A DNA stretch of 64,000 bases from Dendrobates tinctorius (GCF_039654945.1 NW_027361727.1:19096001-19160000), one strand, 5' to 3'; shown: positions 7,920 to 55,803, numbered from the stretch's first letter. Translations and numbers: made by a program. The notes: generated by a model not told the origin, from the sequence alone.

Positions 7920-8070
7920 TCCGTCTGAGGGAGGATCGCCTGGCGGTCGCTTTTATACAGCTGAGTCGTGCAGTGTATGTATTCTTCCGCCCAATGACGG
8001 CTCACCGCACGGGAATACATTAAATAATTACCTTAATATTACGGCACCTAACGTGTCCTGTTAACTGTTT
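7920..8070 (-). promoter_or_regulatory. Leftward Pol II core promoter (TATA + Inr + overlapping GC/CCAAT/half-CRE, MYB-like sites)
   Basis: Minus-strand TATAAAAG at 7957-7950; Inr-like TCAGAC with the A at 7926, 31 nt downstream; CCGCCCAATGACG at 7987-7999; CTGTTAACTG at 8058-8067; local CpG enrichment. Confidence 0.6.
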
Positions 8071-8581
8071 CATAAAGGTTACCCTACAGGCATTAGTCTC
8101 TCGGTAAGGTCACCGTCATTATTCGGTAAATACCTACAGTGAATGTAAATATTTAGATCCGGCACCACACGGGCGGATGGATATGTATTCAGGGGATGAG
8201 TACTGCGGCGACCTAGAGTAGAAGGCCTGGTGGCGCAGCGTATGTTGTGCTGACTGGTCAGGAAGGCGGTGATGGGGAGGATGGGAGCGGGGGATACAGA
8301 GTGGTTACAGCCGAGCTGAGGAGCTACAACCTCCAGCTGTAGTGCTGTGGCTGGCTCAGTCTTTCAGTTTCAGAAAAGCCTTCTCGCCTGGCTGTAGTTT
8401 GTTAAAAGAAAATAAATGCACAGGAAAGTTGTGCATTACTCACCCTCCCCAGGTCTAGCGCTGAGTCTTCAGACTTTTGTTCCTGTAACTTCGACATCTT
8501 GGCAGCCAATCCGTGTGCTCAGCGTCTCTCGCCATCAGCTCGGGGCAGAGCTTCTGTGCTGTGATTGGCTGCAGACAATAA

Positions 8582-8899
8582 GGCTGAGTTCACACTAGGC
8601 ATTTGGCTGCATTTTTTTTCTGCAGCAAAACGAGTGGCAGGAAAGAAGCTGCGGCAAAAATGCAGGTGTTGCTGCTTTTTTGTGGCAGTTTTGATGGGTT
8701 TTTTTTTTTCATGCTATTTTCCCATTTAAGTCTATGGGTGAAAAACGCAGAAAGAAGTGACATGCTGTATGCCCAAAAACAAACAAAGCACAAAATACTG
8801 ATGGCACAAAAACCGTGTGTGCATGAGATTCCTGAAATCTCATAGGCCTATCTGGTACTGTCAAATGCAGCATAAAAACACTCAGTGTGAACTTAGGCC
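8582..8899. mobile_element. Harbinger-type MITE
   Basis: TIRs GGCTGAGTTCACACT / AGTGTGAACTTAGGCC. Confidence 0.7.
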
Positions 8900-9129
8900 A
8901 ACAGGCACTGAAAACAGCCATGGAATCTCAACACTGGACCGGGGGATGGTTAGTCAACTTTTTTTTTTTTTTTTAAGCATCTGGGAGAAGAGCGTTTTTC
9001 TGTAACAGGAACCCCGCTAGGTATTTACAACAGGATCTGTCCTACGGTGTCAGACGCCCCTGTGTAGCGTCTTTCCGAGGCATGTGTTTAGTGTGCAGAT
9101 CCCAACATATACAGTAAGTAAACGGCTAA

Positions 9130-9452
9130 GGCCTAATTCACATTTCAGGTTTTGCATACGAGTGCTAGTCGTGTCTTAGGGAGAGTACCCGTACCTATAA
9201 TGGTGAATGGGGCCGTTCACACGTCCAGGGGTTTTTTTTTTAGCCAAACCATAGAGCCGTCCAGTATTGATCCAAAGGGTCGGATCAAAATCGGTAGTGC
9301 AAGTCTAGGGGTGCTGGATAGAAAGTGGAGACACTTCTTTTTTTTCATATACTGGGCAAATTTATGAAAATTGGACCAAACTGCTGAAAATCCCTAAAGA
9401 AACTTGGTCCATTTTTCAAGTACGTGGAAAAAACTAATTTGTGAATGAGACC
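9130..9452. mobile_element. Harbinger-type MITE (degenerate)
   Basis: GGCCTAATTCACA ... TGTGAATGAGACC with TAA flanks. Confidence 0.55.
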
Positions 9453-10701
9453 TAAATGTGATGTGAATATAGCTTTAAAGGGAACCTGTCACCAGAGAAA
9501 ATGCTAGCAACCTGCAGATATGGGGTTAATCTGCTGGTTACTAACCTGACGAGCGCCTGGACTTAGCTGAACGATGCAGGGAGAAAATTAACTTTGTTCT
9601 CCCCCGGCAGCATTCGGTCTCACTCACGGCTCTGTTTTTACAGGCCCGCAGCTAATAATCGCCTCTCCTCAGCCCCAGCAACGGTGCTGTCTTCAGCACC
9701 CTCTGACTCTGCGATGTCTCAGGGCAGAGGGAGCTATGACGTCATCACTGTACACTAAGCCTCTCTGCCCTGAGCATTGCAGAGGCGGGAGAGATGCTGA
9801 GTGTACCGGACCTGCAGCGAGAACGGCAGAGGTGAGTACTTGATTTTTTTTTTTTTTATGTATGAAGCATTCCATGGGGCCCATAATACTGTATGGAGGA
9901 GCATTCGATGGGGCCCATAATACTGTATGGAGGAGCATTCCATGGGGCCCATAATACTGTATGGAGGAGCATTCCATGGGGCCCATAATACTGTATGGAG
10001 GAGCATTCCATGGGGCCCATAATACTGTATGGAGGAGCATTCCATGGGGCCCATAATACTGTATGGAGGAGCATTCCATGGGGCCCATAATACTGTATGG
10101 AGGAGCATTACTGTTACGCTTACACCCTGACAGGTTGGCGCAAGCGTGGAGGGTGTGGCCCCACTGTGCCACAAACCAGACTACCCTGGAAGGGGCGAGA
10201 CTAAGCAGCTTCCTTGGTGTTCACTGGAACATCTGATGATGTGGTCAGGCTTGCGCGGCAGGTAGCTGTGAGATACCACTCTAGGGTGGTGTCTGGCTGT
10301 GGCTGCTGATCCCACTGGGGAAAAGACCGCTAGGACAAGAACGGGCAAAGGACTCGACTGCCAGACAGGCGGGCACGGCTGAGACACTGGCAGGTATATG
10401 GAAACAGGCAGGGACATGTTCAGACTGGAGGGTATAAGGGAACAGGTAGGGACCTGACTCACAGGTTGCAGAACGGAAGTAGAGCAGGACTGCAAGGAGC
10501 GGATGCTAGGCAGAGCTGCAAGGAGCGGAGCAAGGGACGAGAGCAGGGCAGATGGAGAGGACACGAGGATACTCACCGCAGGGAAAGGAAACCACAGACA
10601 AGGAGGTAAACAGACAGAGGTTAGGACTGAGTTCAGACAAGGTTAGGTACAGGAACAGGATAAGATACAGGAATAGGACACAATACAGACAAGCATCACA
10701 A

Positions 10702-11203
10702 AACAATCACTGACCTCAGGGAGACCAGTCAAAGAAAACACTGCGGCAGCCGGCAAAGGCGCTCAATCAGTGAAATCCTAGGTACAATGCTCCCTGGGAA
10801 ATATGAATATGCAAATAATGTCCGTGGAGCCTCATTTAAGAGTCTCAAACACGGGGCTTGCCAGATCTTCCTCCAGGGAAGGACCCAGCCAAGGGGTGGC
10901 TCCTTTCGGAAACCACCATTACCACCATATTAAGTGGCCCTTTAAGTCAATATCCAGCTCTTTACGAGTTTACAGATATGACAAGGGAAATACCAAGGTC
11001 AGGTATCCATCCACAGACAGCTGTTTCGGGGTGTTGCCCCTCATCAGTGTGGAGTAGGATTCTGGCTAGGTGGGAGCAATGCCTAGTAGACCAACAATCA
11101 CTGACCTCAGGGAGACCAGTCAAAGAAAACACTGCTGCAGCTGGCAAAGGCGCTCAATCAGTGAAATCCTAGGTGCAGAGATTCTTAAATGAGGCTCCAC
11201 GGA
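10702..11203 (-). mobile_element. Penelope-like pseudo-LTR / retrozyme-like fragment
   Basis: Direct repeat of ~80 bp at 10702 and 11093 (period 391); inverted segment 10821-10846 / 11178-11203; contains a hammerhead ribozyme. Confidence 0.75.
11010..11053 (-). ncRNA. Minimal type I hammerhead ribozyme
   Basis: Minus strand UCCACA-CUGAUGA-GGGG CAACA CCCC-GAAA-CAGCUG-UC/UGUGGA: complete catalytic core, 6-bp stem I, 4-bp stem II, palindromic short stem III, GUC cleavage triplet. Confidence 0.92.
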
Positions 11204-13179: not shown

Positions 13180-13312
13180 TGTGTTACTTGTACACTTACA
13201 CTATATACAGAGCTCCTGTATATAATGTCACTGGTAACCACTGTATTACCTGTACACTGACACTATATACAGAGCTCCTGTATATAATGTCACTGGTGAT
13301 CACTGTATTACC
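13180..13312. repeat. ~61-bp tandem repeat (2+ copies) abutting the CR1
   Basis: TGTATTACCTGTACACTGACACTATATACAGAGCTCCTGTATATAATGTCACTGG repeated. Confidence 0.8.
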
Positions 13313-15310
13313 TTGAAGGAGAACTCACCACTTCTCGTGGCAGCTTGTTCCACTCATTGATCACTCTAACTGTCAAAAAGTGTTTTCCAATATCTAATCT
13401 GTGTCTCCTCCCATTCAGTTTCATCCCATGGCTTCTAGTCTTTCCTTGTGCAAATGAGAATAAAGATGATCCTTCTACAATGTGATAGCCTTTCAGATAT
13501 TTGTAGACAGCTATTAAGTCTCCTCTCAGTCTTCTCTTTTGCAAACTAAACATTCCCAAATCCTGCAACCTTTCCTCATAAGACAGGGTTTGCAGACCGG
13601 TCACCATTCTGGTCGCTCTTTTCTGAACTTGCTCCAGTTTGTTGATGTCTTTTTTAAAATGTGGTGCCCAAAACTGGACACAATATTCCAGATGAGGTCT
13701 GACCAAAGAGGAGTAGAGGTAAATAATGACTTCACGTGATCTAGACTGTATGCTTCTGTTAATACATCCTAGAATTGCATTTGCCTTTTTTGCTGCTGCA
13801 TCACACTGTTGACTCATATTCAGTCTGTGATCTATTAGTATACCCAAGTCTTTTTCACATGTGCTGTTGCTCAGCCCTATTCCTCCCATTCTGTATATGC
13901 TTTTTTCATTTTTATTGCCAAGATGTAGTACTTTGCATTTTTCCCTGTTAAAAACCATTCTGTTAGTTGCTGCCCAATTCTCCAGTTTATTTATATCTCT
14001 TTGAATCCTCTCTCTCTCTTCTCTAGTATTAGCTATCCCTCCTAGCTTTGTGTCATCAGCAAATTTAATCAGTTTACCCTCAATTCCTTCATCTAAATCG
14101 TTGATAAAGATGTTGAACAATACAGAGCCCAGGACAGAGCCCTGTGGTACCCCACTTGAGACATTCTTCCAACTGGATGTGCAGCCATTTACAACCACTC
14201 TTTGGGTCCGATCACTAAGCCAGTTATGAATCCACCTAACAGTTGCCTTGTCCATTCCATACTTAGTCATTTTTTCAATAAGGATTGTATGAGATACTTT
14301 GTCAAATGCTTTGCTGAAGTCAAGATATACTATATCTACAGAATTTCCTTGATCCACCCAATCAGTGATTCCGTCATAGAAGGAAATTAAGTTAGTCTGA
14401 CATGACTTATTAGTTACAAACCCATGCTGACTCTCTTTAATCACTTCATTCTTATCCAGGTACTGACATACATGTTGTTTAATAATTTGTTCAAAGATCT
14501 TTCCTGGTATAGCAGTCAGACTCACCGGCCTATAGTTACCTGGGTCCACCTTCTTCCCCTTTTTGAAGATAGGAGCAACATTTGCTCTTCTCCAGTCTTC
14601 TGGGACTTCTCCTGTTCTCCAAGAATTTTCAAAGATTATGGAGAGGGGTTCAAAAATTTCTTCTGCTATCTCCTTCAGTACTCTGGGGTGTAATTCATCT
14701 GGACCTGGAGACTTGAATTCATTTAGGTTAGCTAAGTGTTTCCTCACTATCTGTCTGTTTATAGATATCCTGGATTCTTCTATTCCCTTAATAGGACAGT
14801 GAAGAACAGTTGATGTTACATTTCCTTTCTGAGAGAAAACAGATGCAAAATAGGAATTTAAAAGTTCGGCCTTCTCCACATCCTGTCTTACCATTTCATC
14901 ATTTTCATCCTGTAAAAATCCTATAGCATCTTTGACTTTTCTTTTACTTTTGACATATCCCCAAAATCCTTTATGATTGCTTTTGACATCTCTTGCAAGC
15001 CTCAATTCATTGTCAGCTTTAGTTAATCTGATTTGTGCCCTGCAGGTTCTGCAGACAGCATTATATTCTTCTTTAGATATGCCTCCCTCTTTCCATTTTA
15101 TAAACATTTTTTTCTTCCTTTTTAGCATGTGCTTAAGTTCTGTGTTCATCCATCCTGGTTTCCTTAAATGCTTCCTATTCTTTCCTCTTTTCGGAATTGT
15201 TAACAATTGTGCTTTGAGAATTTCATTTTTCAAGATTTCCCATCCTTCCTGGACATTTTTGTCTTTAAAGATATCCAGCCATTGGATCCCTCCAATTCTC
15301 TTTCTGAATC
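13308..15310 (-). mobile_element. CR1-clade LINE fragment with uninterrupted ORF2 reverse transcriptase (641-codon ORF 13308-15233)
   Basis: KSPGPDELHPRVLKE, NYRPVSLT, YLDFSKAFD, SGVPQGSVLG, KFADDTKL, EKDLG, LVRPHLEYCVQFW, RRLRGDLI. The endonuclease domain and 3' UTR are absent. Confidence 0.95.
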
Positions 15311-15315
15311 ACTTT

Positions 15316-22428: not shown

Positions 22429-22446
22429 TGGCGTCACGAACAGGAT
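22429..22446 (+). promoter_or_regulatory. Primer binding site complementary to tRNA-Ser(CGA) 3' end
   Basis: TGGCGTCACGAACAGGAT is the reverse complement of ATCCTGTTCGTGACGCCA, the 3' end of a vertebrate tRNA-Ser(CGA) isodecoder (recalled). Confidence 0.85.
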
Positions 22447-22485
22447 GACGAGACCCGATGCCATCAGGTTCTGTGTGCTTAAGAT

Positions 22486-23264
22486 TTGTTGGGCTTAAAA
22501 CTTTTGAGAATGTGCAGAAGACCCAATTTAATAGACTGTAAAATGAACATTAAAAATGGCCATTGGCGTGGAGAAGAAGGGCGTGACGAGATGGAAGGTA
22601 CTAGGAAAAGACCGCGAACAGTCTTGGGCCTCCCTTGCCTGAATTGCTATGTGACAGCAACATGGCCCACCCCCCGAGGGGTTTGTATACTGGCTTGGTA
22701 TGGAGGCGCTGGAAGAAGACGCCGCCCCAAGAAGGAGGGGCAGAAGCTAGTGGCGGGAAAGGGGCCAAGAGAGGAGGGAGAAGAACGCCAGAACGCCATC
22801 TTGGAGAGAGACGGGAGGAGGCCTGCGGAGCGCAAGGAGGTTATGCTGAATCTCCCTGGCGCCATGGCTGAAGGCTCCAACCCAGTGTCTGAGATGAACC
22901 GCCAGCAGCTGGAGGACGAAATTGCCCAGCTGACGCACCGCCTGCAACTGAGGCAGGAAGTGCTATGGACATTGAATCTGCAGCGCGCCCAGGAGGGGCC
23001 TACACCTGCGGTACCCGCGACACCTGTACCCGACGCTGTTGCACCGGACCTCTTCCAGGCAGACCCCGTAGAGCCTGAAACCGCTGCCATGCCACCGGCA
23101 GCGTACCTTGTTCCCTCCCTGCCGCTACTACCGGAGGAGTTGTACACAGCACAGGGAGCTGAAGCGGAGGAAGAGAATCCCCCGTCCGGACCTGACGCGG
23201 CTGCACAGGTCCCTACAGAGACCCCCGCGGACCCGGAGCCGCCGTTAGCTCCACCGCCGTCCCC
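22486..23264 (+). pseudogene. ORF of the non-autonomous LTR element (basic stretch, short coiled coil, Pro/Ala/Glu-rich), disrupted by the nested chromovirus; continues at ~29216-29514
   Basis: About 260 open codons directly after the PBS; coiled-coil-like MNRQQLEDEIAQLTHRLQLRQE; no recognisable capsid or pol motif. Confidence 0.5.
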
Positions 23265-29200: not shown

Positions 29201-29209
29201 TTCATAACA
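23265..29209 (+). mobile_element. Full-length Ty3/Gypsy chromovirus (sushi/Tf1-like), LTRs 23265-24139 and 28336-29209
   Basis: TGTTATGAA...TTCATAACA LTRs of ~875 bp; flanking GTCCCC duplication; PPT AAGGGGGGG at ~28324; gag-pol motifs. Confidence 0.95.
24282..28343 (+). pseudogene. gag-pol polyprotein remnant (Gag, Zn knuckle, PR, RT, RNase H, IN, chromodomain) with stops and frameshifts
   Basis: CFFCGDASHTISVC, FVDSGA, LDLRGAY, YLDDILI, EVDAS, TDHKNL, GHPG, YEVEKI...YLVKWKGY...NSW. Confidence 0.93.
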
Positions 29210-32347: not shown

Positions 32348-35300
32348 CAGTGATGGCGATCCTATGGCACAGAGAGGGCACGCAGAACCATCTCAGCTGG
32401 CACGCGGCCTTGCCTCACTGCTCCGGAGCTGCAGCTTCCTTCCTCTCACTTATTGAGCGGCACGGCCGCGGAGCTGAATGATAATGTCATCCAGCTGCGG
32501 CCGCGCCACTCAATGTGTGGAAGGAAGCTGCGGCGCGGAGAGGTGTGTGTGGCCGCTGGTGTGTGTGCGTGTGGCCGCTGGTGTGTGTGTGTGGCCGCTG
32601 GTGTGTGTGTGATGGAGAGAGGGCTAATGATGGGGGTGATGGAGAAGGCAATGATGAGAGTGATGGAGAGAGGGCAATGATGGTGTAATGGGGAGGAGGA
32701 AATGATGGTGGTGGTGGAATGGGCAATTTCTATAAGAAGGGGAACATGATGAGGCATATTTCTACATGAAGGGGATCATGATGGGGCATATTTCTACATG
32801 AAGGAGATCATGATGGGGCATATTTCTACATGAAGGAGATCATGATGGGGCATATTTCTGCATGAAGGGGATCATGATGGGGCATATTTCTACATGAAGG
32901 AGATCATGATGGGGCATATTTCTACATGAAGGAGATCATGATGGGGCACATTTCTACATGAAGGAGATCATGATGGGGCATATTTCTGCATGAAGGGGAT
33001 CATGATGGGGCATATTTCTGCATGAAGGGGATCATGATGGGGCATATTTCTACATGAAGATCATGATGGGGCATATTTCTACATGAAGGAGATCATGATG
33101 GGGCATATTTCTGCATGAAGGGGATCATGATGGGGCATATTTCTACATGAAGGAGATCATGATGGGGCATATTTCTGCATGAAGGGGATCATGATGGGGC
33201 ATATTTCTACATGAAGGAGATCATGATGGGGCATATTTCTACATGAAGGAGATCATGATGGGGCATATTTCTGCATGAAGGGGATCATGATGGGGCATAT
33301 TTCTACATGAAGATCATGATGGGGCATATTTCTACATGAAGGAGATCATGATGGGGCATATTTCTGCATGAAGGGGATCATGATGGGGCATATTTCTACA
33401 TGAAGGAGATCATGATGGGGCATATTTCTACATGAAGGAGATCATGATGGGGCATATTTCTACATGAAGGAGATCATGATGGGGCATATTTCTGCATGAA
33501 GGGGATCATGATGGGGCATATTTCTACATGAAGGAGATCATGATGGGGCATATTTCTACATGAAGGAGATCATGATGGGGCATATTTCTACATGAAGGAG
33601 ATCATGATGGGGCATATTTCTACATGAAGGAGATCATGATGGGGCATATTTCTGCATGAAGGGGATCATGATGGGGCATATTTCTGCATGAAGGGGATCA
33701 TGATGGGGCATATTTCTACATGAAGATCATGATGGGGCATATTTCTACATGAAGGAGATCATGATGGGGCATATTTCTGCATGAAGGGGATCATGATGGG
33801 GCATATTTCTACATGAAGGAGATCATGATGGGGCATATTTCTGCATGAAGGGGATCATGATGGGGCATATTTCTACATGAAGGAGATCATGATGGGGCAT
33901 ATTTCTACATGAAGGAGATCATGATGGGGCATATTTCTGCATGAAGGGGATCATGATGGGGCATATTTCTACATGAAGATCATGATGGGGCATATTTCTA
34001 CATGAAGGAGATCATGATGGGGCATATTTCTGCATGAAGGGGATCATGATAGGGCATATTTCTACATGAAGGAGATCATGATGGGGCATATTTCTACATG
34101 AAGGAGATCATGATGGGGCATATTTCTGCATGAAGGGGATCATGATGGGGCATATTTCTACATGAAGGAGATCATGATGGGGCATATTTCTACATGAAGG
34201 AGATCATGATGGGGCATATTTCTGCATGAAGGGGATCATGATGGGGCATATATCTACATGAAGGAGATCATGATGGGGCATATTTCTACATGAAGGAGAT
34301 CATGATGGGGCATATTTCTGCATGAAGGGGATCATGATGGGGCATATTTCTACATGAAGGAGATCATGATGGGGCATATTTCTACATGAAGGAGATCATG
34401 ATGGGGCATATTTCTACATGAAGGAGATCATGATGGGGCATATTTCTACATGAAGGGGATCATGATGGGGCATATTCCTACATGAAAGGGATCATGATGG
34501 GGCATATTACTACATGAAGGGGATCATGATGGGGCATATTTCTACATGAAGGGGATCATGATGGGGCATATTTCTGCATGATGGGGATGTTGGGGCATAT
34601 TACTACATGAAGGGGATCATGATGGGGCATATTTCTGCATGAAGGGGATCATGATGGGGCATATTTCTGCATGAAGGGGATCATGATGGGGCATATTACT
34701 GCATGAAGGGGATCATGATGGGGCATATTACTACATGAAGGGGATCATGATGGGGCATATTTCTACATGAAGGGGATCATGATGAGGCATATTTCTGCAT
34801 GAAGGGGATCATGATGGGGCATATTTCTGCATGAAGGGGATCATGATGGGGCATATTACTGCATGAAGTGGATCATGATGGGGCATATTTATACAAGAAG
34901 GGGATCATGATGAGGCATATTTCTGCATGAAGGGGATCATGATGGGGCATATTTCTGCATGAAGGGGATCATGATGGGGCATATTTCTGCATGAAAGGGA
35001 TCATGATGGGGCATATTTCTGCATGAAGGGGATCATGATGGGGCATATTTCTGCACGAAGGGGATCATGATGAGGCATATTTCTGCATGAAGGGGATCAT
35101 GATGGGCCATATTACTACATGAAGGGGATCATGATGGGGCATATTACTACATGAAGGAGATCATGATGGGGCATATTACTACATGAAGGAGATCATGATG
35201 GGGCATATTACTACATGAAGGAGATCATGATGGGGCATATTTCTGCATGAAGGGGATCATGATGGGGCATATTACTACATGAAGGGGATCATGATGGAGC

Positions 35301-38300
35301 ATATTACTACATGAAGGAGATCATGATGGGGCATATTTCTGCATGAAGGGGATCATGATGGGGCATATTTCTGCATGAAGGGGATCATGATGGGACATAT
35401 TACTACATGAAGGGGATCATGATGGGGCATATTTCTACATGAAGGGGATCATGATGGGGCATATTTCTGCATGATGGGGATGTTGGGGCATATTACTACA
35501 TGAAGGGGATCATGATGGGGCATATTTATGCATGATGGGGATGTTGGGGCATATTACTACATGAAGGGGATCATGAAGGGGCATATTTCTGCATGAAGGG
35601 CATCATGATGGGGCATATTACTACATGAAGGGGATCATGATGGGGTATATTTCTACATGAAGGGGATCATGATGGGGTATATTTCTACATGAAGGGGATC
35701 ATGATGAGGCATATTTCTGCATGAAGGGGATCATGATGGGGCATATTTCTGCATGAAGGGGATCATGATGGGGCATATTTCTGCATGAAGGGGATCATGA
35801 TGGGGCATATTACTACATGAAGGAGATCATGATGGGGCATATTCCTACATGAAAGGGATCATGATGGGGCATATTACTACATGAAGGGGATCATGATGGG
35901 GCATATTTCTACATGAATGGGATCATGATGGGGCATATTTCTGCATGATGGGGATGTTGGGGCATATTACTACATGAAGGGGATCATGATGGGGCATATT
36001 TCTGCATGAAGGGCATCATGATGGGGCATATTACTGCATGAAGGGGATCATGATGGGGCATATTACTACATGAAGGGGATCATGATGGGGTATATTTCTA
36101 CATGAAGGGGATCATGATGGGGCATATTTCTACATGAAGGAGATCATGATGAGGCATATTTCTGCATGAAGGGGATCATGATGGGGCATATTTCTGCATG
36201 AAGGGGATCATGATGGGGCATATTTCTGCATGAAGGGGATCATGATGGGGCATATTACTACATGAAGGGGATCATGATGGGGCATATTTCTACATGAAGG
36301 GGATCATGATGGGACATATTTCTGTATGAAGGGGATCATGATGGGGCATATTTCTGCATGAAGAGGATCATGATGAGGCATATTTCTACATGAAGGGGAT
36401 CATGATGGGGCATATTTCTGCATGAAGGGGATCATGATGGGGCATATTTCTGCATGAAGGGGATCATGATGGGGCATATTTCTGCATGAAGGGGATCATG
36501 ATGGGGCATATTTCTACATGAAGGGGATCATGATGGGACATATTTCTGCATGAAGGGGATCATGATGGGGCATATTTCTGCATGAAGAGGATCATGATGA
36601 GGCATATTTCTGCATGAAGAGGATCATGATGAGGCATATTTCTGCATGAAGGAGATCATGATGGGGCATATTTCTGCATGAAGGGGATCATGATGGGGCA
36701 TATTTCTGCATGAAGGGGATCATGATGGGGCATATTTCTACATGAAGGGGATCATGATGGGGCATATTTCTACATGAAGGGGATCATGATGGGACATATT
36801 TCTGCATGAAGGGGATCATGATGGGGCATATTTCTGCATGAAGAGGATCATGATGAGGCATATTTCTGCATGAAGGAGATCATGATGGGGCATATTTCTG
36901 CATGAAGGGGATCATGATGGGGCATATTTCTGCATGAAGGGGATCATGATGGGGCATATTTCTGCATGAAGGGGATCATGATGGGGCATATTTCTACATG
37001 AAGGGGATCATGATGGGGCATATTTCTACATGAAGGGGATCATGATGGGACATATTTCTGCATGAAGGGGATCATGATGGGGCATATTTCTGCATGAAGA
37101 GGATCATGATAAGGCATCTTTCTGCATGAAGGAGATCATGATGGGGCATATTTCTGCATGAAGGGGATCATGATGGGGCATATTTCTGCATGAAGGGGAT
37201 CATGATGGGGCATATTTCTGCATGAAGGGGATCATGATGGTGCATATTTCTGCATGAAGGGGATCATGATGGGGCATATTTCTGCATGAAGGGGATCATG
37301 ATGGGGCATATTTCTGCATGAAGGGGATCATGATGGGGCATATTTCTACATGAAGGGGATCATGATGGGGCATATTTCTGCATGAAGGGGATCATGATGG
37401 GGCATATTACTACATGAAGGGGATCATGATGGGGCATATTTCTGCATGAAGGGGATCATGATGGGGCATATTTCTACATGAAGGGGATCATGATGGGACA
37501 TATTTCTGCATGAAGGGGATCATGATGGGGCATATTTCTGCATGAAGAGGATCATGATGAGGCATATTTCTGCATGAAGGAGATCATGATGGGGCATATT
37601 ACTACATGAAGGAGATCATGATGGGGCATATTTCTGCAAGAAGGGGATCATGATGGGGCATATTTCTGCATGAAGGGGATCATGATGGGGCATATTTCTG
37701 CATGAAGGGGATCATGATGGGGCATATTTCTGCATGAAGGGGATCACGATGGGGCATATTTCTGCATGAAGGGGATCATGATGGGGCATATTTCTGCATG
37801 AAGGGGATCATGATGGGGCATATTTCTACATGAAGGAGATCATGATGGGGCATATTCCTACATGAAAGGGATCATGATGGGGCATATTTCTGCATGAAGG
37901 GGATCATGATGGGGCATATTTCTGCATGAAGGGGATCATGATGGTGCATATTTCTGCATGAAGGGGATCATGATGGGGCATATTTCTGCATGAAGGGGAT
38001 CATGATGGGGCATATTTCTGCATGAAGGGGATCATGATGGGGCATATTTCTACATGAAGGAGATCATGATGGGGCATATTCCTACATGAAAGGGATCATG
38101 ATGGGGCATATTACTACATGAAGGGGATCATGATGGGGCATATTTCTGCATGAAGGGCATCATGATGGGGCATATTACTGCATGAAGGGGATCATGATGG
38201 GGCATATTACTACATGAAGGGTATCATGATGGGGTATATTTCTACATGAAGGGGATCATGATGGGGCATATCTCTACATGAAGGAGATCATGATGAGGCA

Positions 38301-41300
38301 TATTTCTGCATGAAGGGGATCATGATGGGGCATATTTCTGCATGAAGGGGATCATGATGGGGCATATTACTACATGAAGGGGATCATGATGGGGCATATT
38401 TCTGCATGAAGGGGATCATGATGGGGCATATTTCTACATGAAGGGGATCATGATGGGACATATTTCTGCATGAAGGGGATCATGATGGGGCATATTTCTG
38501 CATGAAGAGGATCATGATGAGGCATATTTCTGCATGAAGGAGATCATGATGGGGCATATTACTACATGAAGGAGATCATGATGGGGCATATTTCTGCAAG
38601 AAGGGGATCATGATGGGGCATATTTCTGCATGAAGGGGATCATGATGGGGCATATTTCTGCATGAAGGGGATCATGATGGGGCATATTTCTGCATGAAGG
38701 GGATCACGATGGGGCATATTTCTGCATGAAGGGGATCATGATGGGGCATATTTCTGCATGAAGGGGATCATGATGGGGCATATTTCTACATGAAGGAGAT
38801 CATGATGGGGCATATTCCTACATGAAAGGGATCATGATGGGGCATATTACTACATGAAGGGGATCATGATGGGGCATATTTCTACATGAAGGGGATCATG
38901 ATGGGGCATATTTCTGCATGAAGGGGATCACGATGGGGCATATTTCTGCATGAAGGGGATCATGATGGGGCATATTTCTGCATGAAGGGGATCATGATGG
39001 GGCATATTTCTACATGAAGGAGATCATGATGGGGCATATTACTACATGAAGGGGATCATGATGGGGCATATTTCTACATGAAGGGGATCACGATGGGGCA
39101 TATTTCTGCATGAAGGGGATCACGATGGGGCATATTTCTGCATGAAGGGGATCATGATGGGGCATATTTCTGCATGAAGGGGATCATGATGGGGCATATT
39201 TCTACATGAAGGAGATCATGATGGGGCATATTCCTACATGAAAGGGATCATGATGGGGCATATTACTACATGAAGGGGATCATGATGGGGCATATTTCTA
39301 CATGAAGGGGATCATGATGGGGCATATTTCTGCATGATGGGGATGTTGGGGCATATTACTACATGAAGGGGATCATGATGGGGCATATTACTACATGAAG
39401 GGGATCATGATGGGGCATATTTCTACATGAAGGGGATCATGATGGGGCATATTTCTGCATGATGGGGATGTTGGGGCATATTACTACATGAAGGGGATCA
39501 TGATGGGGCATATTTCTACATGAAGGGTATCATGATGGGGCATATTTCTACATGAAGGAGATCATGATGAGGCATATTTCTGCATGAAGGGGATCATGAT
39601 GGGGCATATTTCTGCATGAAGGGGATCATGATGGGGCATATTACTACATGAAGGGGATCATGATGGGGCATATTTCTGCATGAAGGAGATCATGATGGGG
39701 CATATTTCTACATGAAGGGGATCATGATGGGACATATTTCTGCATGAAGGGGATCATGATGGGGCATATTTCTGCATGAAGAGGATCATGATGAGGCATA
39801 TTTCTACATGAAGGGGATCATGATGGGGCATATTTCTGCATGAAGGGGATCATGATGGGGCATATTACAACATGAAGGGGATCATGATGGGGCATATTAC
39901 TACATGAAGGGGATCATGATGGGGCATATTTCTGCATGAAGGGGATCATTATGGGGCATATTTCTGCATGAAGGGGATCATGATGGGGCATATTACTACA
40001 TGAAGGGGATCATGATGGGGCATATTTCTGCATGAAGGGGATCATGATGGGGCATATTTCTGCATGAAGGGGATCATGATGGGGCATATTACTACATGAA
40101 GGGGATCATGATGGGGCATATTTCTGCATGAAGGGGATCATGATGGGGCATATTTCTACATGAAGGGGATCATGATGGGACATATTTCTGCATGAAGGGG
40201 ATCATGATGGGGCATATTTCTGCATGAAGAGGATCATGATGAGGCATATTTCTGCATGAAGGAGATCATGATGGGGCATATTACTACATGAAGGAGATCA
40301 TGATGGGGCATATTTCTGCAAGAAGGGGATCATGATGGGGCATATTTCTGCATGAAGGGGATCATGATGGGGCATATTTCTGCATGAAGGGGATCATGAT
40401 GGGGCATATTTCTGCATGAAGGGGATCATGATGGGGCATATTTCTGCATGAAGGGGATCATGATGGGGTATATTTCTGCATGAAGGGGATCATGATGGGG
40501 CATATTTCTACATGAAGGAGATCATGATGGGGCATATTACTACATGAAGGGTATCATGATGGGGCATATTTCTACATGAAGGGGATCATGATGGGGCATA
40601 TTTCTGCATGATGGGGATGTTGGGGCATATTACTACATGAAGGGGATCATGATGGGGCATATTTCTGCATGAAGGGCATCATGATGGGGCATATTACTGC
40701 ATGAAGGGGATCATGATGGGGCATATTACTACATGAAGGGGATCATGATGGGGTATATTTCTGCATGAAGAGGATCATGATGAGGCATATTTCTACATGA
40801 AGGGGATCATGATGGGGCATATTTCTGCATGAAGGGGATCATGATGGGGCATATTACTACATGAAGGGGATCATGATGGGGCATATTTCTACATGAAGGG
40901 GATCATGATGGGACATATTTCTGCATGAAGGGGATCATGATGGGGCATATTTCTGCATGAAGGGGATCATGATGGGGCATATTTCTGCATGAAGAGGATC
41001 ATGATGAGGCATATTTCTACATGAAGGGGATCATGATGGGGCATATTTCTGCATGAAGGGGATCATGATGGGGCATATTTCTGCATGAAGGGGATCATGA
41101 TGGGGCATATTACTACATGAAGGGGATCATGATAGGGCATATTTCTGCATGAAGAGGATCATGATGGGGCATATTTCTGCATGAAGGGGATCATGATGGG
41201 GCATATTTCTGCATGAAGGGGATCATGATGGGGCATATTTCTACATGAAGGGGATCATGATGGGGCATATTACTGCATGAAGGGGATCATGATGGGGCAT

Positions 41301-44300
41301 ATTACTACATGAAGGGGATCATGATGGGGTATATTTCTACATGAAGGGGATCATGATGAGGCATATTTCTGCATGAAGGGGATCATGATGGGGCATATTT
41401 CTGCATGAAGGGGATCATGATGGGGCATATTTCTGCATGAAGGGGATCATGATGGGGCATATTTCTGCATGAAGGGGATCATGATGGGGCATATTTCTAC
41501 ATGAAGGGGATCATGATGGGACATATTTCTGCATGAAGGGGATCATGATGGGGCATATTTCTACATGAAGGGGATCATGATGGGGCATATTACTGCATGA
41601 AGGGGATCATGATGGGGCATATTACTACATGAAGGGGATCATGATGGGGTATATTTCTACATGAAGGGGATCATGATGAGGCATATTTCTGCATGAAGGG
41701 GATCATGATGGGGCATATTTCTGCATGAAGGGGATCATGATGGGGCATATTTCTGCATGAAGGGGATCATGATGGGGCATATTTCTGCATGAAGGGGATC
41801 ATGATGGGGCATATTTCTACATGAAGGGGATCATGATGGGACATATTTCTGCATGAAGGGGATCATGATGGGGCATATTTCTGCATGAAGAGGATCATGA
41901 TGAGGCACATTTCTGCATGAAGGAGATCATGATGGGGCATATTACTACATGAAGGAGATCATGATGGGGCATATTTCTGCAAGAAGGGGATCATGATGGG
42001 GCATATTTCTGCATGAAGGGGATCATGATGGGGCATAATTCTGCATGAAGGGGATCATGATGGGGCATATTTCTGCATGAAGGGGATCATGATGGTGCAT
42101 ATTTCTGCATGAAGGGGATCATGATGGGGCATATTTCTGCATGAAGGGGATCATGATGGGGCATATTTCTGCATGAAGGGGATCATGATGGGGCATATTT
42201 CTACATGAAGGAGATCATGATGGGGCATATTCCTACATGAAAGGGATCATGATGGGGCATATTACTACATGAAGGGGATCATGATGGGGCATATTTCTAC
42301 ATGAAGGGGATCATGATGGGGCATATTTCTGCATGATGGGGATGTTGGGGCATATTACTACATGAAGGGGATCATGATGGGGCATATTTCTGCATGAAGG
42401 GGATCATGATGGGGCATATTTCTGCATGAAGGGGATCATGATGGGGCATATTTCTGCATGAAGGGGATCATGATGGGGCATATTTCTGCATGAAGGGGAT
42501 CATGATGGGGTATATTTCTGCATGAAGGGGATCATGATGGGGCATATTTCTACATGAAGGAGATCATGATGGGGCATATTACTACATGAAGGGTATAATG
42601 ATGGGGCATATTTCTACATGAAGGGGATCATGATGGGGCATATTTCTGCATGATGGGGATGTTGGGGCATATTACTACATGAAGGGGATCATGATGGGGC
42701 ATATTTCTGCATGAAGGGCATCATGATGGGGCATATTACTGCATGAAGGGGATCATGATGGGGCATATTACTACATGAAGGGGATCATGATGGGGTATAT
42801 TTCTGCATGAAGAGGATCATGATGAGGCATATTTCTACATGAAGGGGATCATGATGGGGCATATTTCTGCATGAAGGGGATCATGATGGGGCATATTACT
42901 ACATGAAGGGGATCATGATGGGGCATATTTCTACATGAAGGGGATCATGATGGGACATATTTCTGCATGAAGGGGATCATGATGGGGCATATTTCTGCAT
43001 GAAGGGGATCATGATGGGGCATATTTCTGCATGAAGAGGATCATGATGAGGCATATTTCTACATGAAGGGGATCATGATGGGGCATATTTCTGCATGAAG
43101 GGGATCATGATGGGGCATATTTCTGCATGAAGGGGATCATGATGGGGCATATTACTACATGAAGGGGATCATGATGGGGCATATTTCTGCATGAAGAGGA
43201 TCATGATGGGGCATATTTCTGCATGAAGGGGATCATGATGGGGCATATTTCTGCATGAAGGGGATCATGATGGGGCATATTTCTACATGAAGGGGATCAT
43301 GATGGGGCATATTACTGCATGAAGGGGATCATGATGGGGCATATTACTACATGAAGGGGATCATGATGGGGTATATTTCTACATGAAGGGGATCATGATG
43401 AGGCATATTTCTGCATGAAGGGGATCATGATGGGGCATATTTCTGCATGAAGGGGATCATGATGGGGCATATTTCTGCATGAAGGGGATCATGATGGGGC
43501 ATATTTCTGCATGAAGGGGATCATGATGGGGCATATTTCTACATGAAGGGGATCATGATGGGACATATTTCTGCATGAAGGGGATCATGATGGGGCATAT
43601 TTCTGCATGAAGAGGATCATGATGAGGCATATTTCTGCATGAAGGAGATCATGATGGGGCATATTACTACATGAAGGAGATCATGATGGGGCATATTTCT
43701 GCAAGAAGGGGATCATGATGGGGCATATTTCTGCATGAAGGGGATCATGATGGGGCATAATTCTGCATGAAGGGGATCATGATGGGGCATATTTCTGCAT
43801 GAAGGGGATCATGATGGTGCATATTTCTGCATGAAGGGGATCATGATGGGGCATATTTCTGCATGAAGGGGATCATGATGGGGCATATTTCTGCATGAAG
43901 GGGATCATGATGGGGCATATTTCTACATGAAGGAGATCATGATGGGGCATATTCCTACATGAAAGGGATCATGATGGGGCATATTACTACATGAAGGGGA
44001 TCATGATGGGGCATATTTCTACATGAAGGGGATCATGATGGGGCATATTTCTGCATGATGGGGATGTTGGGGCATATTACTACATGAAGGGGATCATGAT
44101 GGGGCATATTTCTGCATGAAGGGCATCATGATGGGGCATATTACTGCATGAAGGGGATCATGATGGGGCATATTACTACATGAAGGGGATCATGATGGGG
44201 TATATTTCTACATGAAGGGGATCATGATGGGGCATATCTCTACATGAAGGAGATCATGATGAGGCATATTTCTGCATGAAGGGGATCATGATGGGGCATA

Positions 44301-45024
44301 TTTCTGCATGAAGGGGATCATGATGGGGCATATTTCTGCATGAAGGGGATCATGATGGGGCATATTACTACATGAAGGGGATCATGATGGGGCATATTTC
44401 TGCATGAAGGGGATCATGATGGGGCATATTTCTACATGAAGGGGATCATGATGGGGCATATTTCTGCATGAAGGGGATCATGATGGGGCATATTACTACA
44501 TGAAGGGGATCATGATGGGGCATATTTCTGCATGAAGGGGATCATGATGGGGCATATTTCTGCATGAAGGAGATCATGATGGGGCATATTTCTGCATGAA
44601 GGGGATCATGATGGGACATATTTCTGCATGAAGGAGATCATGATGGGGCATATTTCTGCATGAAGGGGATCATGATGGGGCATATTTCTGCATGAAGGGG
44701 ATCATGATGGGGCATATTCCTGCATGAAGGAGATCATGATGGGGCATATTCCTGCATGAAGGGGATCATGATGGGGCATATTTCTACATGAAGGGGATCA
44801 TGATGGGGCATATTTCTGCATGAAGGGGATCATGATGGGGCATATTTCTGCATGAAGGGGATCATGATGGGGCATATTTCTACATGAAGGGGATCATGAT
44901 GGGGCATGTTCCTGCATGAAGGGGATCATAATGGGGCATTTGGCACGTGTTGGCACTTCGTCATAAATAATTGGGTTTAAGTTGCAGTTTGGGCACTCGG
45001 TCTCAGAAAGGCTCGCCATCACTG
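32348..45024. mobile_element. Non-autonomous hAT element, 12.7 kb, swollen by an internal satellite
   Basis: TIRs CAGTGATGGCGA / TCGCCATCACTG; perfect 8-bp TSD GCCTAAGA at 32340-32347 and 45025-45032. Confidence 0.92.
32745..44940. repeat. 32-bp satellite, ~380 copies (ATTTCTGCATGAAGGGGATCATGATGGGGCAT)
   Basis: Period 32 (32761, 32793...); head-to-tail with no spacers; recurrent variant units. Confidence 0.98.
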
Positions 45025-46039
45025 GCCTAAGACGTTGGGGTATTTTTTTGCTTTGTTTTTTTCTTTGTGTAGCAAAAATCATGTTGTGAAGTATGTATAA
45101 GGCTGGGCTCAGATGGGCGTATTTTACCGTATGGACTGCAAGGAAAACAAACTGCGTCTGACCACAGTTTGAAGTAAAATGCGTGCGGCGCCATTTTGTC
45201 ACCTAAGAAGTTTAGAGGGCTATTCCACATTGGAAGGTGAACGGGCCCATGGACAACACGTCCACCGCTATCCGCCAGGCCACGTTCGCACTCAGCAAGT
45301 ATCGGAGCCCTTTTGTGGTATCACAATGGCGCTGCACGCACATTAACGCTGTTTTCCGATGTGGTTACCGGCCGCCTGGTTATTACAGGTGGATAACATC
45401 ATTTTTTCATATGTTATATCTGTAAATGTCGTGCGGTCAGTTACTATGGCGCAATACAGCTGCAACTTGACGTAAAAATTGCGTTTTCCCAATACAATGT
45501 GTGAACAGCGCCTAAGAACAGCGTGCCTGTGATTCTCATACAGAAACATGGCGTCTACATGCATTTTTCCTCACAAAAGTTTTGTCATTTTACAGCGGGG
45601 TTTTGCGGTGCTGTGGGCTCGTACAGAAGACACCCAGTGTTATACATGGCTTATTTATTGGAAGTTGTCACAGAAAGCCGCCTGTGTCCCTCATTCTGTT
45701 ATATAAGCCCCGTGTACAGGGCGGAATACACACTGGTGCAGGCTGCAGGCCGTGCGTCATAGCTGCCACAGCTCAGAATACACAGGCACGTATCAACTGG
45801 TTATGAACGGCACTACATACACACCGCTCACCGGTACTTCTATATCCCTACGCCATAACAATTCGCCATTTTATCCTGAGTCATTCGTGAGGGGAGCGGC
45901 TTCTATTATGCATAGTATCGCTTGTAACCTTTTTATTTTGTTTTTGAATGAAAAAAAAAATGATGCTGGCAGTGTGAAAAAACAGTTGAATAATTTATTT
46001 TAAAAGGTTTTAGTGTCTTCTGTGAGGTAAAATAAGGAG

Positions 46040-46160
46040 GGACTATATGACGTTCTCCTCACAGAGAGACCGCGGAAGGTTACAAACAATGACTGTGTGT
46101 GAAGTCATGAGAGTCTATAAATACCCTCCCCCACTGGCACTGCTGCTCATTGCTGTGAAG
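46040..46160 (+). promoter_or_regulatory. Rightward Pol II core promoter
   Basis: TATAAATA 46116-46123; Inr-like CTCATT ~46146-46151; half-CRE TGACG at 46049; donor-like AAG|GTATTT at 46239; CpG-enriched upstream region with YAACTG/CAGTTR sites. Confidence 0.55.
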
Positions 46161-46576
46161 ACGTCTCTGTGTGTGGCGGTTACAGCTTTTGTTCCCCGTG
46201 CTGTCTTTTCTCGGCTATTATTCAGGCTTTCGTGTAAGGTATTTGTTCTCACTGGCATTTATTGGAGCTTAAGATACCATTTCACCAGGTTATTGGGCTG
46301 GGTGAGAGCGGCAGTCTTGTGGGGATAGCGTCATGTGACTGTTATGGCTGATATCTCCGTATAGAGAGATTTTACTCGCATTTTATTAACTTGTTGTTGT
46401 CCGGGTGTTGTTACAATGGTGGGTGGAGGAGCGGAATTGCCATTGCACTTCTCAACCCTGTAACTACAGCGGCCAGTCTTGTGTAGAAGCTTCAGTCATA
46501 AACCGGCCGCCGTCCTTGTTGGGGAGTAGGAGGTTTAGCTGTAGAGATGGCCGCCGTCCTTGTATGGAAGGTTTAG

Positions 46577-46749
46577 GCTGTGTGCCCACATAAGCGGTTT
46601 TTAAGCGTTTTCCATGCCAAAAGGCTTAAAAATGCAAACTATGTTCTATGAGAATGTGGATGCTCTGGAAAAAGCCGCATAAAAATTCGTTTTTCTTGGG
46701 ACCGAGTCCGGTTTTTAGTCAGGAGTCTTCTGTATGTGGGGACATAGCT
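46577..46749. mobile_element. Harbinger-type MITE inserted in a ~40-bp tandem repeat
   Basis: GGCTGTGTGCCCACATA / TATGTGGGGACATAGCT; TTA/TAA flanks. Confidence 0.7.
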
Positions 46750-46847
46750 TAAGTCCTAGACATGGCCGCCATCCTTGTGTGGAAGGTTTAGTCCTAGACA
46801 TGGCGGCTGTTTGTTGTGTACTGGGTGGGGACCTTGATGGCCGCAGA

Positions 46848-47081
46848 GGGCGGAGCTCCGGGGATGGCTTCTATGACGTCACGCCTTTGTTGCTGGCTCC
46901 GACCGTTGGTCTGCTGGTAGGCGGAGCTAGGGGTGATGACGCGTTATGTACCGCCCTCTGTTGACTGTCTCCATAATGTGGGCGGAGCTACAGATAAATG
47001 TGATACGTCGGGTTACTGCTTGCTGTTAGCAGTCAGTGGGCGGAGCTGCAGGTTGTGACTGGGTTCTCGGTGGGCCGAGCT
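46848..47081 (+). promoter_or_regulatory. Tandem GC-box / CRE / MYB-like regulatory modules
   Basis: GGCGGAGCT at ~46848, 46920, 46980, 47038 plus a variant at 47072; TGACGTCA 46874-46881; CCGTTG 46903-46908. Confidence 0.6.
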
Positions 47082-47139
47082 AATTCCGATGCTGCATATT
47101 GTAGCCATTTTCTGACCTTGCTGTTTAGTGGTAGGCTTG

Positions 47140-55759: not shown

Positions 55760-55803
<44 letters not shown>

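What the first reader, a model, noticed from the sequence alone, without database searches (positions are those of the whole stretch)
7920..47100. Divergent promoter pair separated by ~37 kb of transposons: candidate bidirectional piRNA cluster / lncRNA locus
Seen: a leftward TATAAAAG+Inr promoter (7957/7926) and a rightward TATAAATA promoter (46116) face away from each other, both with CRE-like and MYB-like (YAACKG/CNGTTR) motifs nearby. Splice-signal polarity and T/G skew flip accordingly (minus strand on the left, plus strand on the right). Neither arm has a recognisable CDS, and most of the DNA between 8400 and 45030 is TE or satellite. Known: mammalian and bird pachytene piRNA clusters are often divergently transcribed from A-MYB-bound promoters. 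Inference: this is an amphibian equivalent whose untranscribed centre tolerated insertions.
Basis: inference. Interest (0 to 1): 0.72.

Follow-up and report, generated by a model that had tools for sequence, protein, structure and literature searches.

The report
Frog MALAT1 gene plus neighbouring unspliced RNA
The left "arm" is this frog's copy of MALAT1, a long non-coding RNA already known in jawed vertebrates, and the right "arm" is a separate, abundant, unspliced non-coding RNA of about 3.2 kb. These are two ordinary RNA genes 38 kb apart, not a piRNA cluster.

Summary

**Left arm (minus strand, about 7926 to 1202).** It ends in the MALAT1 3' module:
- two U-rich motifs;
- directly after it, a tRNA-like mascRNA (Rfam RF01684, 66.7 bits, E 1e-11).

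Strand composition flips at 7908, within 20 bases of the predicted start. The 6.7 kb length fits published frog MALAT1 (Bufo 5.9 kb), and includes a 0.9 kb transposon insertion.

**Right arm (plus strand).** RNA-derived contigs from four studies show no depth (one run 1.1 in the last bin) over 45001-46000. They begin at 46150-46167, just after the TATA box at 46116. They then tile to about 49400 with no splice joint, reading straight through the predicted donor at 46238. Poly(A) signals lie at 49391-49409. No ORF exceeds 76 aa, and there is no Pfam or Rfam match.

**Centre.** It consists of LINE fragments, a nested chromovirus LTR element and a 12.2 kb satellite of 32-bp units.

**Why not a piRNA cluster.** The two starts are 38 kb apart, not a shared central promoter. 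Both RNAs are shorter than 10 kb. The MYB-like and CRE-like motifs occur at chance density.

Frogs are already known to have MALAT1 inverted so that its head faces SCYL1 (Weghorst 2024). The right-hand RNA is the only possibly new item.

The parts
1145..1201 (-). mascRNA-type tRNA-like element; the RNase P site lies between 1202 and 1201
   Evidence: Rfam RF01684, 66.7 bits (gathering score 42.5), E 1e-11, full model 1-56
1202..1290 (-). MALAT1-type triple-helix module: U-rich motif 1 (1285-1276), U-rich motif 2 (1247-1238) and the A-rich tract with GC (1214-1202)
   Evidence: Read directly. The MFE fold pairs the A-rich tract with U-rich motif 2. The architecture is as described in PMC8457004
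1137..1144 (-). [quoted passage not shown]
   Evidence: The human trailer begins UUGCUUU (PMC8457004); 5 of 7 letters are the same
1202..7926 (-). Inferred MALAT1 orthologue transcript body, about 6.7 kb with no ORF over 69 aa
   Evidence: Every 1-kb bin from 1001 to 8000 has negative GT-CA skew, and the cumulative minimum is at 7908. ORFs. RNA coverage was not tested
5617..6532 (.). CpG-rich MITE-like transposon inserted in the MALAT1 body, with an internal 260-bp palindrome at 5895-6154
   Evidence: Terminal inverted repeats TAGGCTGTGTGCCCAC at 5617-5632 and 6517-6532. Palindrome. CpG observed/expected is about 1.0-1.25. The miRNA-like Rfam hits here fall below threshold
7926..8000 (-). Putative MALAT1 core promoter: Inr A at 7926, TATAAAAG at 7957-7950, inverted CCAAT plus CRE half-site at 7991-7999
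   Evidence: CpG observed/expected is 0.7-0.8 over 7751-8500. Use as a start site is inferred from the skew, not from reads
13308..15233 (-). LINE reverse-transcriptase ORF (641 aa)
   Evidence: Pfam RVT_1, E 1.6e-34. A second RT fragment lies at 19102-19518 on the minus strand
23264..29210 (+). Ty3/gypsy chromovirus LTR retrotransposon with 877-bp LTRs (96.8% identical), nested inside an outer repeat pair at 21431-22425 and 30358-31666
   Evidence: Self-BLAST. Pfam protease, RT, RNase H, integrase zinc-binding, SH3 and chromo domains
32721..44939 (.). Satellite of 32-bp units, 383 copies, 93% matches, strongly G-skewed
   Evidence: TRF score 20882. GC skew is about +0.44
45001..47250 (.). CpG-rich block around the right promoter
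   Evidence: CpG observed/expected is 0.64-0.99 against a window mean of 0.36
46116..46149 (+). Right core promoter: TATAAATA at 46116-46123 and Inr-like CTCATTG with its A at 46149
   Evidence: RNA contigs begin at 46160 (X7, directly after adapter letters) and 46167 (X5), and no depth (X8 1.1 in the last bin) is seen over 45001-46000
46149..49420 (+). Abundant, unspliced and probably polyadenylated non-coding RNA of about 3.2 kb
   Evidence: Contigs from 4 studies tile it with no splice joint and read through 46238. Depth in the SMART cDNA run X8 rises to 393 at 49201-49400, then falls to 0. No Pfam hit, no Rfam hit, longest ORF 76 aa
49391..49409 (+). Poly(A) signals: ATTAAA at 49391 and 49396, AATAAA at 49404
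   Evidence: They coincide with the drop in depth
48668..49003 (.). MITE-like insertion inside the right RNA (ends TTAAAGGG ... CCCTTTTAA)
   Evidence: Read. Contigs with foreign flanks end at 48670 in X5 and X7 (table 7)
49842..50214 (.). MITE with 25-nt terminal inverted repeats, downstream of the right RNA; it explains the isolated depth peak there
   Evidence: I1, 96% complementary. Depth peak at 49801-50200

Best explanation
The window holds two separate RNA polymerase II non-coding genes that point away from each other across 38 kb of transposons and satellite.

**Left gene (minus strand).** It is the frog orthologue of MALAT1.
- Transcription starts near 7926, downstream of a TATA box. 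This start is inferred.
- The RNA runs about 6.7 kb without an ORF.
- It is not polyadenylated. RNase P cuts between 1202 and 1201, in front of a tRNA-like mascRNA.
- The freed A-rich 3' end folds back onto two U-rich motifs to form a protective triple helix. That mechanism is established for the family; here only the sequence elements are shown.

**Right gene (plus strand).** It starts about 30 bases after the TATA box at 46116 and yields an abundant, unspliced RNA of about 3.2 kb that ends at poly(A) signals near 49400. The extent and the absence of splicing are shown by RNA contigs. The strand and polyadenylation are inferred. It is an unnamed lncRNA of unknown role.

**Context.** In frogs MALAT1 is known to be inverted, so that its promoter faces SCYL1. 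The right RNA therefore sits in the MALAT1-SCYL1 gap. The pair is not one bidirectional unit.
For: **Left gene**
- mascRNA match of 66.7 bits, E 1e-11, over the full model.
- U-rich motif 1, U-rich motif 2 and an A-rich tract with GC lie directly upstream. The fold pairs the A-rich tract with motif 2.
- The trailer partly matches the conserved UUGCUUU.
- The skew minimum is at 7908, and all 1-kb bins from 1001 to 8000 are negative.
- The longest sense ORF is 69 aa.
- The length of 6.7 kb (5.8 kb without the MITE) compares with 5,874 nt in Bufo and 7,093 nt in a caecilian.

**Right gene**
- No depth (X8 1.1 in the last bin) over 45001-46000, with onset at 46160-46167, in four studies.
- Adapter letters abut 46160, and run X8 carries SMART template-switch oligo letters, so these are cDNA libraries.
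- Contigs at 46160-46339 and 46167-46339 cross the predicted donor at 46238, and no splice joint was reported.
- Depth is 3'-biased in X8 and stops at about 49400, where ATTAAA and AATAAA lie.
- No protein or RNA family match.

**Locus arrangement.** The anuran layout comes from PMC10869381.
Against: - Its start site, even coverage and lack of splicing are therefore inferred.
- No SCYL1 or FRMD8 exon was recognised in the window, so synteny is unconfirmed.
- A CpG island with exon-like signals at 1-305, only 0.9 kb beyond the MALAT1 3' end, is unexplained.
- Contigs over 47400-48700 differ from the window by 3-4%, with variants shared between studies. Two versions of the 5' end also exist. Some reads may therefore come from another allele or a second copy.
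- Contigs cannot give the strand.
Confidence: 0.75

Rival explanations
1. The 3' module at 1145-1290 belongs to frog NEAT1, not MALAT1. Frog NEAT1 is reported as 51-116 kb, so the whole window would lie inside it and 7926 would not be its start.
For: Rfam RF01684 covers both mascRNA and menRNA. Frog NEAT1 is very long and also ends in a triple helix plus tRNA-like element. No reads were laid on the left arm.
Against: The strand skew flips exactly at 7908 and is positive over most of 8001-64000. A TATA-bearing, CpG-rich promoter sits there. The interval 1202-7926 is nearly TE-free, whereas upstream is TE and satellite. No depth over 45001-45800 in four RNA runs and 1.1 in one run (X8) at 45801-46000. 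The size fits Bufo MALAT1.
Confidence: 0.1
2. One reading: the two arms are the halves of a divergently transcribed, A-MYB-driven pachytene-type piRNA cluster whose centre filled with insertions.
For: Two outward-facing TATA promoters and no coding sequence in either arm. Small RNAs were not examined.
Against: The left arm is MALAT1-type with an RNase P-processed end. The starts are 38.2 kb apart rather than sharing a central promoter, and the RNAs are 6.7 and 3.2 kb rather than at least 10 kb. The MYB-like motif is at chance density. The promoters are CpG-rich, whereas pachytene clusters often have low or intermediate CG. The right RNA is abundant in all four studies laid.
Confidence: 0.04
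3. The right RNA is not an independent gene. It would be the 5' end (non-coding first exon plus retained intron, or an upstream alternative promoter) of SCYL1 or another protein-coding gene beyond the window.
For: In frogs SCYL1 lies on the strand opposite to MALAT1, beyond MALAT1's 5' end. A donor-like GTAAGG sits at 46238. Housekeeping-type motifs (a full CRE at 46874, GGGCGG boxes) lie at +300 to +900. Low depth continues to 51000.
Against: Depth beyond 46238 equals or exceeds that of the putative exon. Contigs cross the donor, and no loose end or joint is listed there. Depth collapses at the poly(A) signals near 49400. No coding exon was found up to 64000, and from 52750 onward the sequence is a ~570-bp tandem array.
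Confidence: 0.12
4. The right-arm coverage comes largely from a second genomic copy or a dispersed repeat family, so this particular locus may be weakly transcribed or silent.
For: Contigs over 47400-48700 differ by 3-4%, with the same variants in several studies. Two 5'-end versions coexist in X1. TE pieces at 46574-46725, about 47197-47451 and 48668-49003 attract foreign contigs.
Against: Contigs at 46310-46617/46649 (X5, X8) and at 46840-46996/47071 (X1, X5, X8) match the window perfectly. Coverage is bounded exactly by this locus's TATA box and poly(A) signals. The window holds no second copy.
Confidence: 0.12

Closest known systems
MALAT1 (vertebrate lncRNA with an RNase P-processed triple-helix 3' end); anuran orthologues in Xenopus tropicalis and Bufo bufo (Weghorst et al. 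2024, PMC10869381)
   Same: The 3' mascRNA, two U-rich motifs, the A-rich tract with GC, and a partly conserved trailer. No ORF. The size is about 6-7 kb. A divergent neighbour lies on the other strand, as expected after the frog-specific inversion.
   Different: This species' copy carries a 0.9-kb MITE insertion. Synteny with SCYL1 and NEAT1, and expression, were not shown here. The trailer differs at 2 of 7 conserved positions.
NEAT1 short isoform (an unspliced, polyadenylated, abundant RNA of about 3.2-3.7 kb next to MALAT1)
   Same: The right RNA is unspliced, about 3.2 kb, abundant, ends at a poly(A) signal, shows weak coverage beyond that site, and neighbours MALAT1.
   Different: Position and orientation are wrong. 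Published frog NEAT1 lies tail-to-tail with MALAT1 on its 3' side, whereas this RNA is head-to-head on the 5' side. No triple helix or tRNA-like end occurs up to 64000. No sequence similarity was tested.
Divergently transcribed pachytene piRNA clusters (Yu et al. 2021, PMC7782496); Xenopus piRNA clusters (PMC5340914)
   Same: Outward-facing non-coding transcription units, unspliced on the right.
   Different: There is no shared central promoter (38 kb apart). The transcripts are under 10 kb. The promoters are CpG-rich. One arm is MALAT1. There are no small-RNA data.

Membership tests
MALAT1 / triple-helix lncRNA class | tRNA-like element (mascRNA or menRNA) at the 3' end that directs RNase P cleavage | tested here: met
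   RF01684, 66.7 bits against a gathering score of 42.5, E 1e-11, model positions 1-56 of 56, at 1201-1145 on the minus strand
MALAT1 / triple-helix lncRNA class | [quoted passage not shown] | tested here: met
   UUUUCUUUUU at 1285-1276, UUUUGCUUUU at 1247-1238 and AAAAAAAGCAAAA at 1214-1202. The fold pairs the tract with motif 2. The fold as a whole is not more stable than shuffles (z = -0.99). The triple helix itself cannot be computed here
MALAT1 / triple-helix lncRNA class | [quoted passage not shown] | tested here: inconclusive
   The trailer is UUGCUGA against the conserved UUGCUUU. Five of 7 letters are the same, and UUUGCU is complementary to AGCAAA
MALAT1 / triple-helix lncRNA class | Long, mostly unspliced, non-coding, highly and evenly expressed transcript | tested here: inconclusive
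   Non-coding status is met, with a longest sense ORF of 69 aa in 6.7 kb.
MALAT1 (as opposed to NEAT1) | Size of about 5-9 kb with even coverage; synteny next to SCYL1; in frogs on the strand opposite to NEAT1, SCYL1 and FRMD8 | tested here: inconclusive
   The size of 6.7 kb fits, inferred from the skew switch at 7908 and the TATA box. No SCYL1, FRMD8 or second triple helix lies in the window
Divergent pachytene piRNA cluster | Both arms transcribed from one central bidirectional promoter (hundreds of bp) | tested here: not met
   The candidate starts at 7926 and 46149 are 38.2 kb apart. The definition comes from PMC7782496
Divergent pachytene piRNA cluster | [quoted passage not shown] | tested here: not met
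   Left about 6.7 kb to the RNase P site. Right about 3.2 kb to the poly(A) signals and the drop in depth
Divergent pachytene piRNA cluster | A-MYB binding at the promoter | not testable with these tools
   Only motif counts are possible. YAACKG occurs 72 times in 64 kb (1.1 per kb), so one site near each promoter is the chance expectation
Divergent pachytene piRNA cluster | 26-31-nt, 1U small RNAs, strand-switched, specific to the germline | not tested

The most novel reading that the evidence does not exclude
The right-hand RNA (46149 to about 49420, plus strand) is a previously undescribed, abundant, unspliced lncRNA that belongs to the anuran MALAT1-NEAT1 neighbourhood. It may have arisen with, or been repositioned by, the frog-specific MALAT1 inversion. 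It may share MALAT1's regulatory domain and act as a third nuclear-type abundant RNA of this locus, resembling the NEAT1 short isoform in form.
Probability: 0.15. Interest if true: 0.55.

Novelty: new member of a known kind. Interest (0 to 1): 0.3.

Why it matters
The result removes a false lead: this is not an amphibian A-MYB piRNA cluster. It also places a well-known lncRNA in a large, TE-rich frog genome where annotation pipelines usually miss it. Weghorst 2024 notes that MALAT1 and NEAT1 are correctly annotated only in manually curated genomes.

Two smaller points may interest people who study this locus:
- A young transposon has inserted into the body of a very highly expressed, conserved lncRNA.
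- An abundant unspliced RNA sits in the gap that the frog-specific inversion opened between MALAT1 and SCYL1.

Tried and rejected
- **Inverted duplication.** I tested whether the two promoter regions are inverted copies of each other. Self-BLAST at E 1e-5 found no similarity between 1-8400 and 45000-49500.
- **Known families on the right arm.** Rfam at E up to 1 gave only a meaningless 18-bit SCARNA7 hit. Pfam on all ORF pieces of 55 aa or more gave nothing below E 0.01.
- **SCYL1 start.** Its N-terminus, recalled from memory, was not found in six frames. This is weak, because it rests on memory.
- **Fishing transcript contigs.** Exact look-up of spurious ORFs from both arms found nothing on record.
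- **Earlier findings.** A search for the words MALAT1, NEAT1, mascRNA, SCYL1 and FRMD8 found none.
- **miRNA-like hits at 5790-6510.** They are all far below gathering score and are explained by the MITE palindrome.
- **Bacterial-type promoter and terminator scan.** It is not informative for a vertebrate.
- **Literature on a MALAT1 promoter with CRE or TATA.** Nothing usable.
Full report
**What is in the sequence**

On the minus strand, TATAAAAG lies at 7957-7950, and 31 bases downstream is CTCAGAC with its A at 7926. An inverted CCAAT box and a CRE half-site lie at 7991-7999. On the plus strand, TATAAATA lies at 46116-46123, followed by CTCATTG with its A at 46149.

As bare motifs they are not remarkable:
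- The window has 41 TATAAA and 16 strict TATAAA[AT][AG] sites.
- MYB-like YAACKG occurs 72 times (1.1 per kb).
- TGACG occurs 67 times.

The "MYB-like and CRE-like motifs nearby" are therefore what chance gives. What singles the two sites out is their context. Only four TATA 8-mers lie in CpG-rich DNA, and these two are among them.

**The left arm is MALAT1**

A scan of the whole window against Rfam gave one hit above threshold. It is the mascRNA/menRNA family RF01684 at 1201-1145 on the minus strand, with 66.7 bits against a gathering score of 42.5, E 1e-11, and the full model aligned with posterior probability 1.00.

Reading the minus strand just upstream shows the rest of the MALAT1 3' module:
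- UUUUCUUUUU at 1285-1276;
- UUUUGCUUUU at 1247-1238;
- AAAAAAAGCAAAA at 1214-1202, which ends exactly where the tRNA-like element begins.

This matches the architecture described for MALAT1. [quoted passage not shown] The minimum-energy fold pairs the A-rich tract with U-rich motif 2, although the fold as a whole is not more stable than shuffles (z = -0.99). The 3' trailer reads UUGCUGA against the vertebrate-conserved UUGCUUU, so that feature is only partly kept.

- **Strand composition.** Every 1-kb bin from 1001 to 8000 has an excess of C+A on the plus strand, and the sign flips at 8001. The cumulative curve has its minimum at 7908, 18 bases from the predicted start.
- **TE content.** The interval is almost free of transposons, while everything from about 8400 to 45000 is TE or satellite.
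- **Length.** It is 6.7 kb, or 5.8 kb without a 916-bp MITE at 5617-6532. That fits published MALAT1 sizes of 5,874 nt in Bufo bufo and 7,093 nt in a caecilian (PMC10869381 Supplementary Data 2).

The longest sense ATG ORF is 69 aa. Expression, the exact start and the absence of splicing are therefore inferred.

**MALAT1 or NEAT1?**

Rfam's family covers both. Frog NEAT1 is reported as 51 kb in Xenopus and 116 kb in Bufo, and it also ends in a triple helix. If the module were NEAT1's, the whole window would lie inside that gene.

Several things argue for MALAT1: the skew switch at a TATA-bearing, CpG-rich promoter, the mostly positive skew from 8001 to 64000, no RNA depth (X8 1.1 in the last bin) over 45001-46000 in four runs, and the size. 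None of these is decisive. I put NEAT1 at about 0.1.

**The right arm is a separate, unspliced RNA of about 3.2 kb**

Ten small runs from four studies hold about half of the sampled words of 45900-47100. I laid one run from each study on 45001-51000.

These are cDNA libraries. Run X8 carries SMART template-switch oligo letters as loose ends, and X7 has Illumina adapter letters directly in front of 46160.

- **Onset.** All four runs show zero depth from 45001 to 45800, and X8 shows 1.1 in 45801-46000. Contigs then begin at 46160 (X7) and 46167 (X5). The 17 unmatched letters in front of the X5 contig look like a diverged counterpart of 46150-46166, which would put its first base at 46150.
- **Extent.** Contigs tile the stretch to about 49370, and weakly to 49824 in X5.
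- **No splicing.** Contigs at 46160-46339 and 46167-46339 read straight through the predicted donor at 46238. The only two joints reported are single low-depth contigs, one of them inside the MITE at 49842-50214.
- **3' end.** In the SMART library, depth climbs toward the right (20, 90, 260, 393) and then falls to zero after 49400, where ATTAAA at 49391 and 49396 and AATAAA at 49404 lie. This 3' bias would fit oligo(dT) priming (the library record is blank), and with the TATA orientation it is the basis for calling the RNA plus-stranded and polyadenylated. Contigs themselves do not give the strand.

The RNA has no sense ATG ORF above 76 aa, no Pfam domain in any ORF piece and no Rfam match. 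It contains TE pieces at 46574-46725, about 47197-47451 and 48668-49003, which explains the foreign-flanked contigs there. The depth peak at 49801-50200 is a MITE with 25-nt inverted ends.

There is a caveat. Between 47400 and 48700 the contigs differ from the window by 3-4%, with the same variants in several studies, and two versions of the first 100 bases coexist in one run. Other segments match perfectly. This may be allelic variation or a second copy, and I could not tell which.

**The centre**

It contains:
- minisatellites at 9866-10109 and 11710-12262;
- a LINE reverse-transcriptase ORF at 13308-15233 on the minus strand (RVT_1, E 1.6e-34), and a second RT fragment at 19102-19518;
- C-rich low-complexity repeats at 17138-18054;
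- a chromovirus LTR element at 23264-29210, with 877-bp LTRs 96.8% identical and protease, RT, RNase H, integrase and chromo domains;
- an outer repeat pair at 21431-22425 and 30358-31666, inside which the chromovirus is nested;
- a 12.2-kb satellite of 383 units of 32 bp at 32721-44939.

**Comparison with what is known**

Weghorst et al. 2024 (PMC10869381) show that MALAT1 is present in all major jawed-vertebrate clades and NEAT1 in tetrapods. In frogs and toads MALAT1 alone is inverted, giving the order FRMD8, NEAT1, inverted MALAT1, SCYL1. MALAT1 is thus tail-to-tail with NEAT1 and head-to-head with SCYL1, 69 kb apart in Xenopus tropicalis.

A divergent neighbour upstream of frog MALAT1 is therefore expected. 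What I found there is not SCYL1 but an unspliced non-coding RNA. No SCYL1-like start was seen in the window (from a remembered N-terminus, so weak). From 52750 onward the sequence is a non-coding tandem array of about 570 bp, according to an earlier follow-up.

The right RNA resembles the NEAT1 short isoform in form: unspliced, about 3.2 kb, polyadenylated, abundant, with weak read-through. It lies on the wrong side and in the wrong orientation for the published frog NEAT1, and no triple-helix end follows within the window.

**The piRNA reading**

Pachytene clusters that are divergently transcribed use one central promoter; the paper's example is 475 bp with the A-MYB peak equidistant from both starts. 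They have first exons or unspliced transcripts of at least 10 kb, and often low or intermediate CG promoters (PMC7782496).

Here the starts are 38.2 kb apart, the RNAs are 6.7 and 3.2 kb, both promoters are CpG-enriched, and one arm is MALAT1. The proposal that an originally shared promoter was split by 38 kb of insertions is not needed. Small RNAs could not be checked, so I leave the reading at about 0.04.

**Verdict**

The left gene is a new species' copy of a known lncRNA in a known frog-specific arrangement. The right gene is an uncharacterised lncRNA and is the only possibly new item.

Other agents' notes call this genome the dyeing poison frog. I did not verify that.

Noticed in passing
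window 1-305: A CpG island (GC 0.62, CpG observed/expected 0.83) lies 0.9 kb beyond the MALAT1 3' end. It has an ETS-like CCGGAAGT. On the minus strand there is a strong-Kozak ATG (about 207), then 7 codons, then GTGAGT. On the plus strand there is an exon-like stretch ending in a GTATGT donor at 306. In fish, birds and other non-anuran vertebrates the SCYL1 promoter sits about 1-2 kb after MALAT1 on the same strand, so this could be another gene's first exon or a relic carried along by the frog inversion. It is unresolved.
   Followed up: partly
window 5617-6532: A young, CpG-rich MITE-like element lies inside the MALAT1 body. It has terminal inverted repeats TAGGCTGTGTGCCCAC and an internal 260-bp near-perfect palindrome at 5895-6154. 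The palindrome produces spurious sub-threshold miRNA hits. A one-ended fragment of the same family lies in the right RNA at 46574.
   Followed up: partly
window 46470-47090: Transcription-factor-like motifs recur 300-900 bases downstream of the right start. They are GGGCGGAGCT-like boxes (five), ATGGCCGCC(G/A)TCCTTGT (three), and a full palindromic CRE TGACGTCA at 46874. They could mark a second, housekeeping-type promoter or an RNA-level repeat.
   Followed up: no
window 45700: A second TATA-like box (TATATAAG) sits in CpG-rich context 416 bases upstream of the used one. RNA depth between it and 46000 is zero in three of the runs laid and 1.1 in X8 (45801-46000).
   Followed up: partly
window 996-1001 (minus strand): A canonical AATAAA lies about 145 bases downstream of the mascRNA. 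It parallels the back-up poly(A) site described downstream of the RNase P site in human MALAT1.
   Followed up: no
window 46001-64000: The GT-CA skew stays positive in every 1-kb bin to the end of the window, and weak RNA depth continues past the poly(A) site to 51000. This may reflect read-through transcription into the ~570-bp tandem array, or only the array's own composition.
   Followed up: no
window 47400-48700: RNA contigs from several independent studies share the same set of substitutions and small indels relative to the window (3-4% divergence), while neighbouring segments are identical. This may be a divergent haplotype or a second copy.
   Followed up: no
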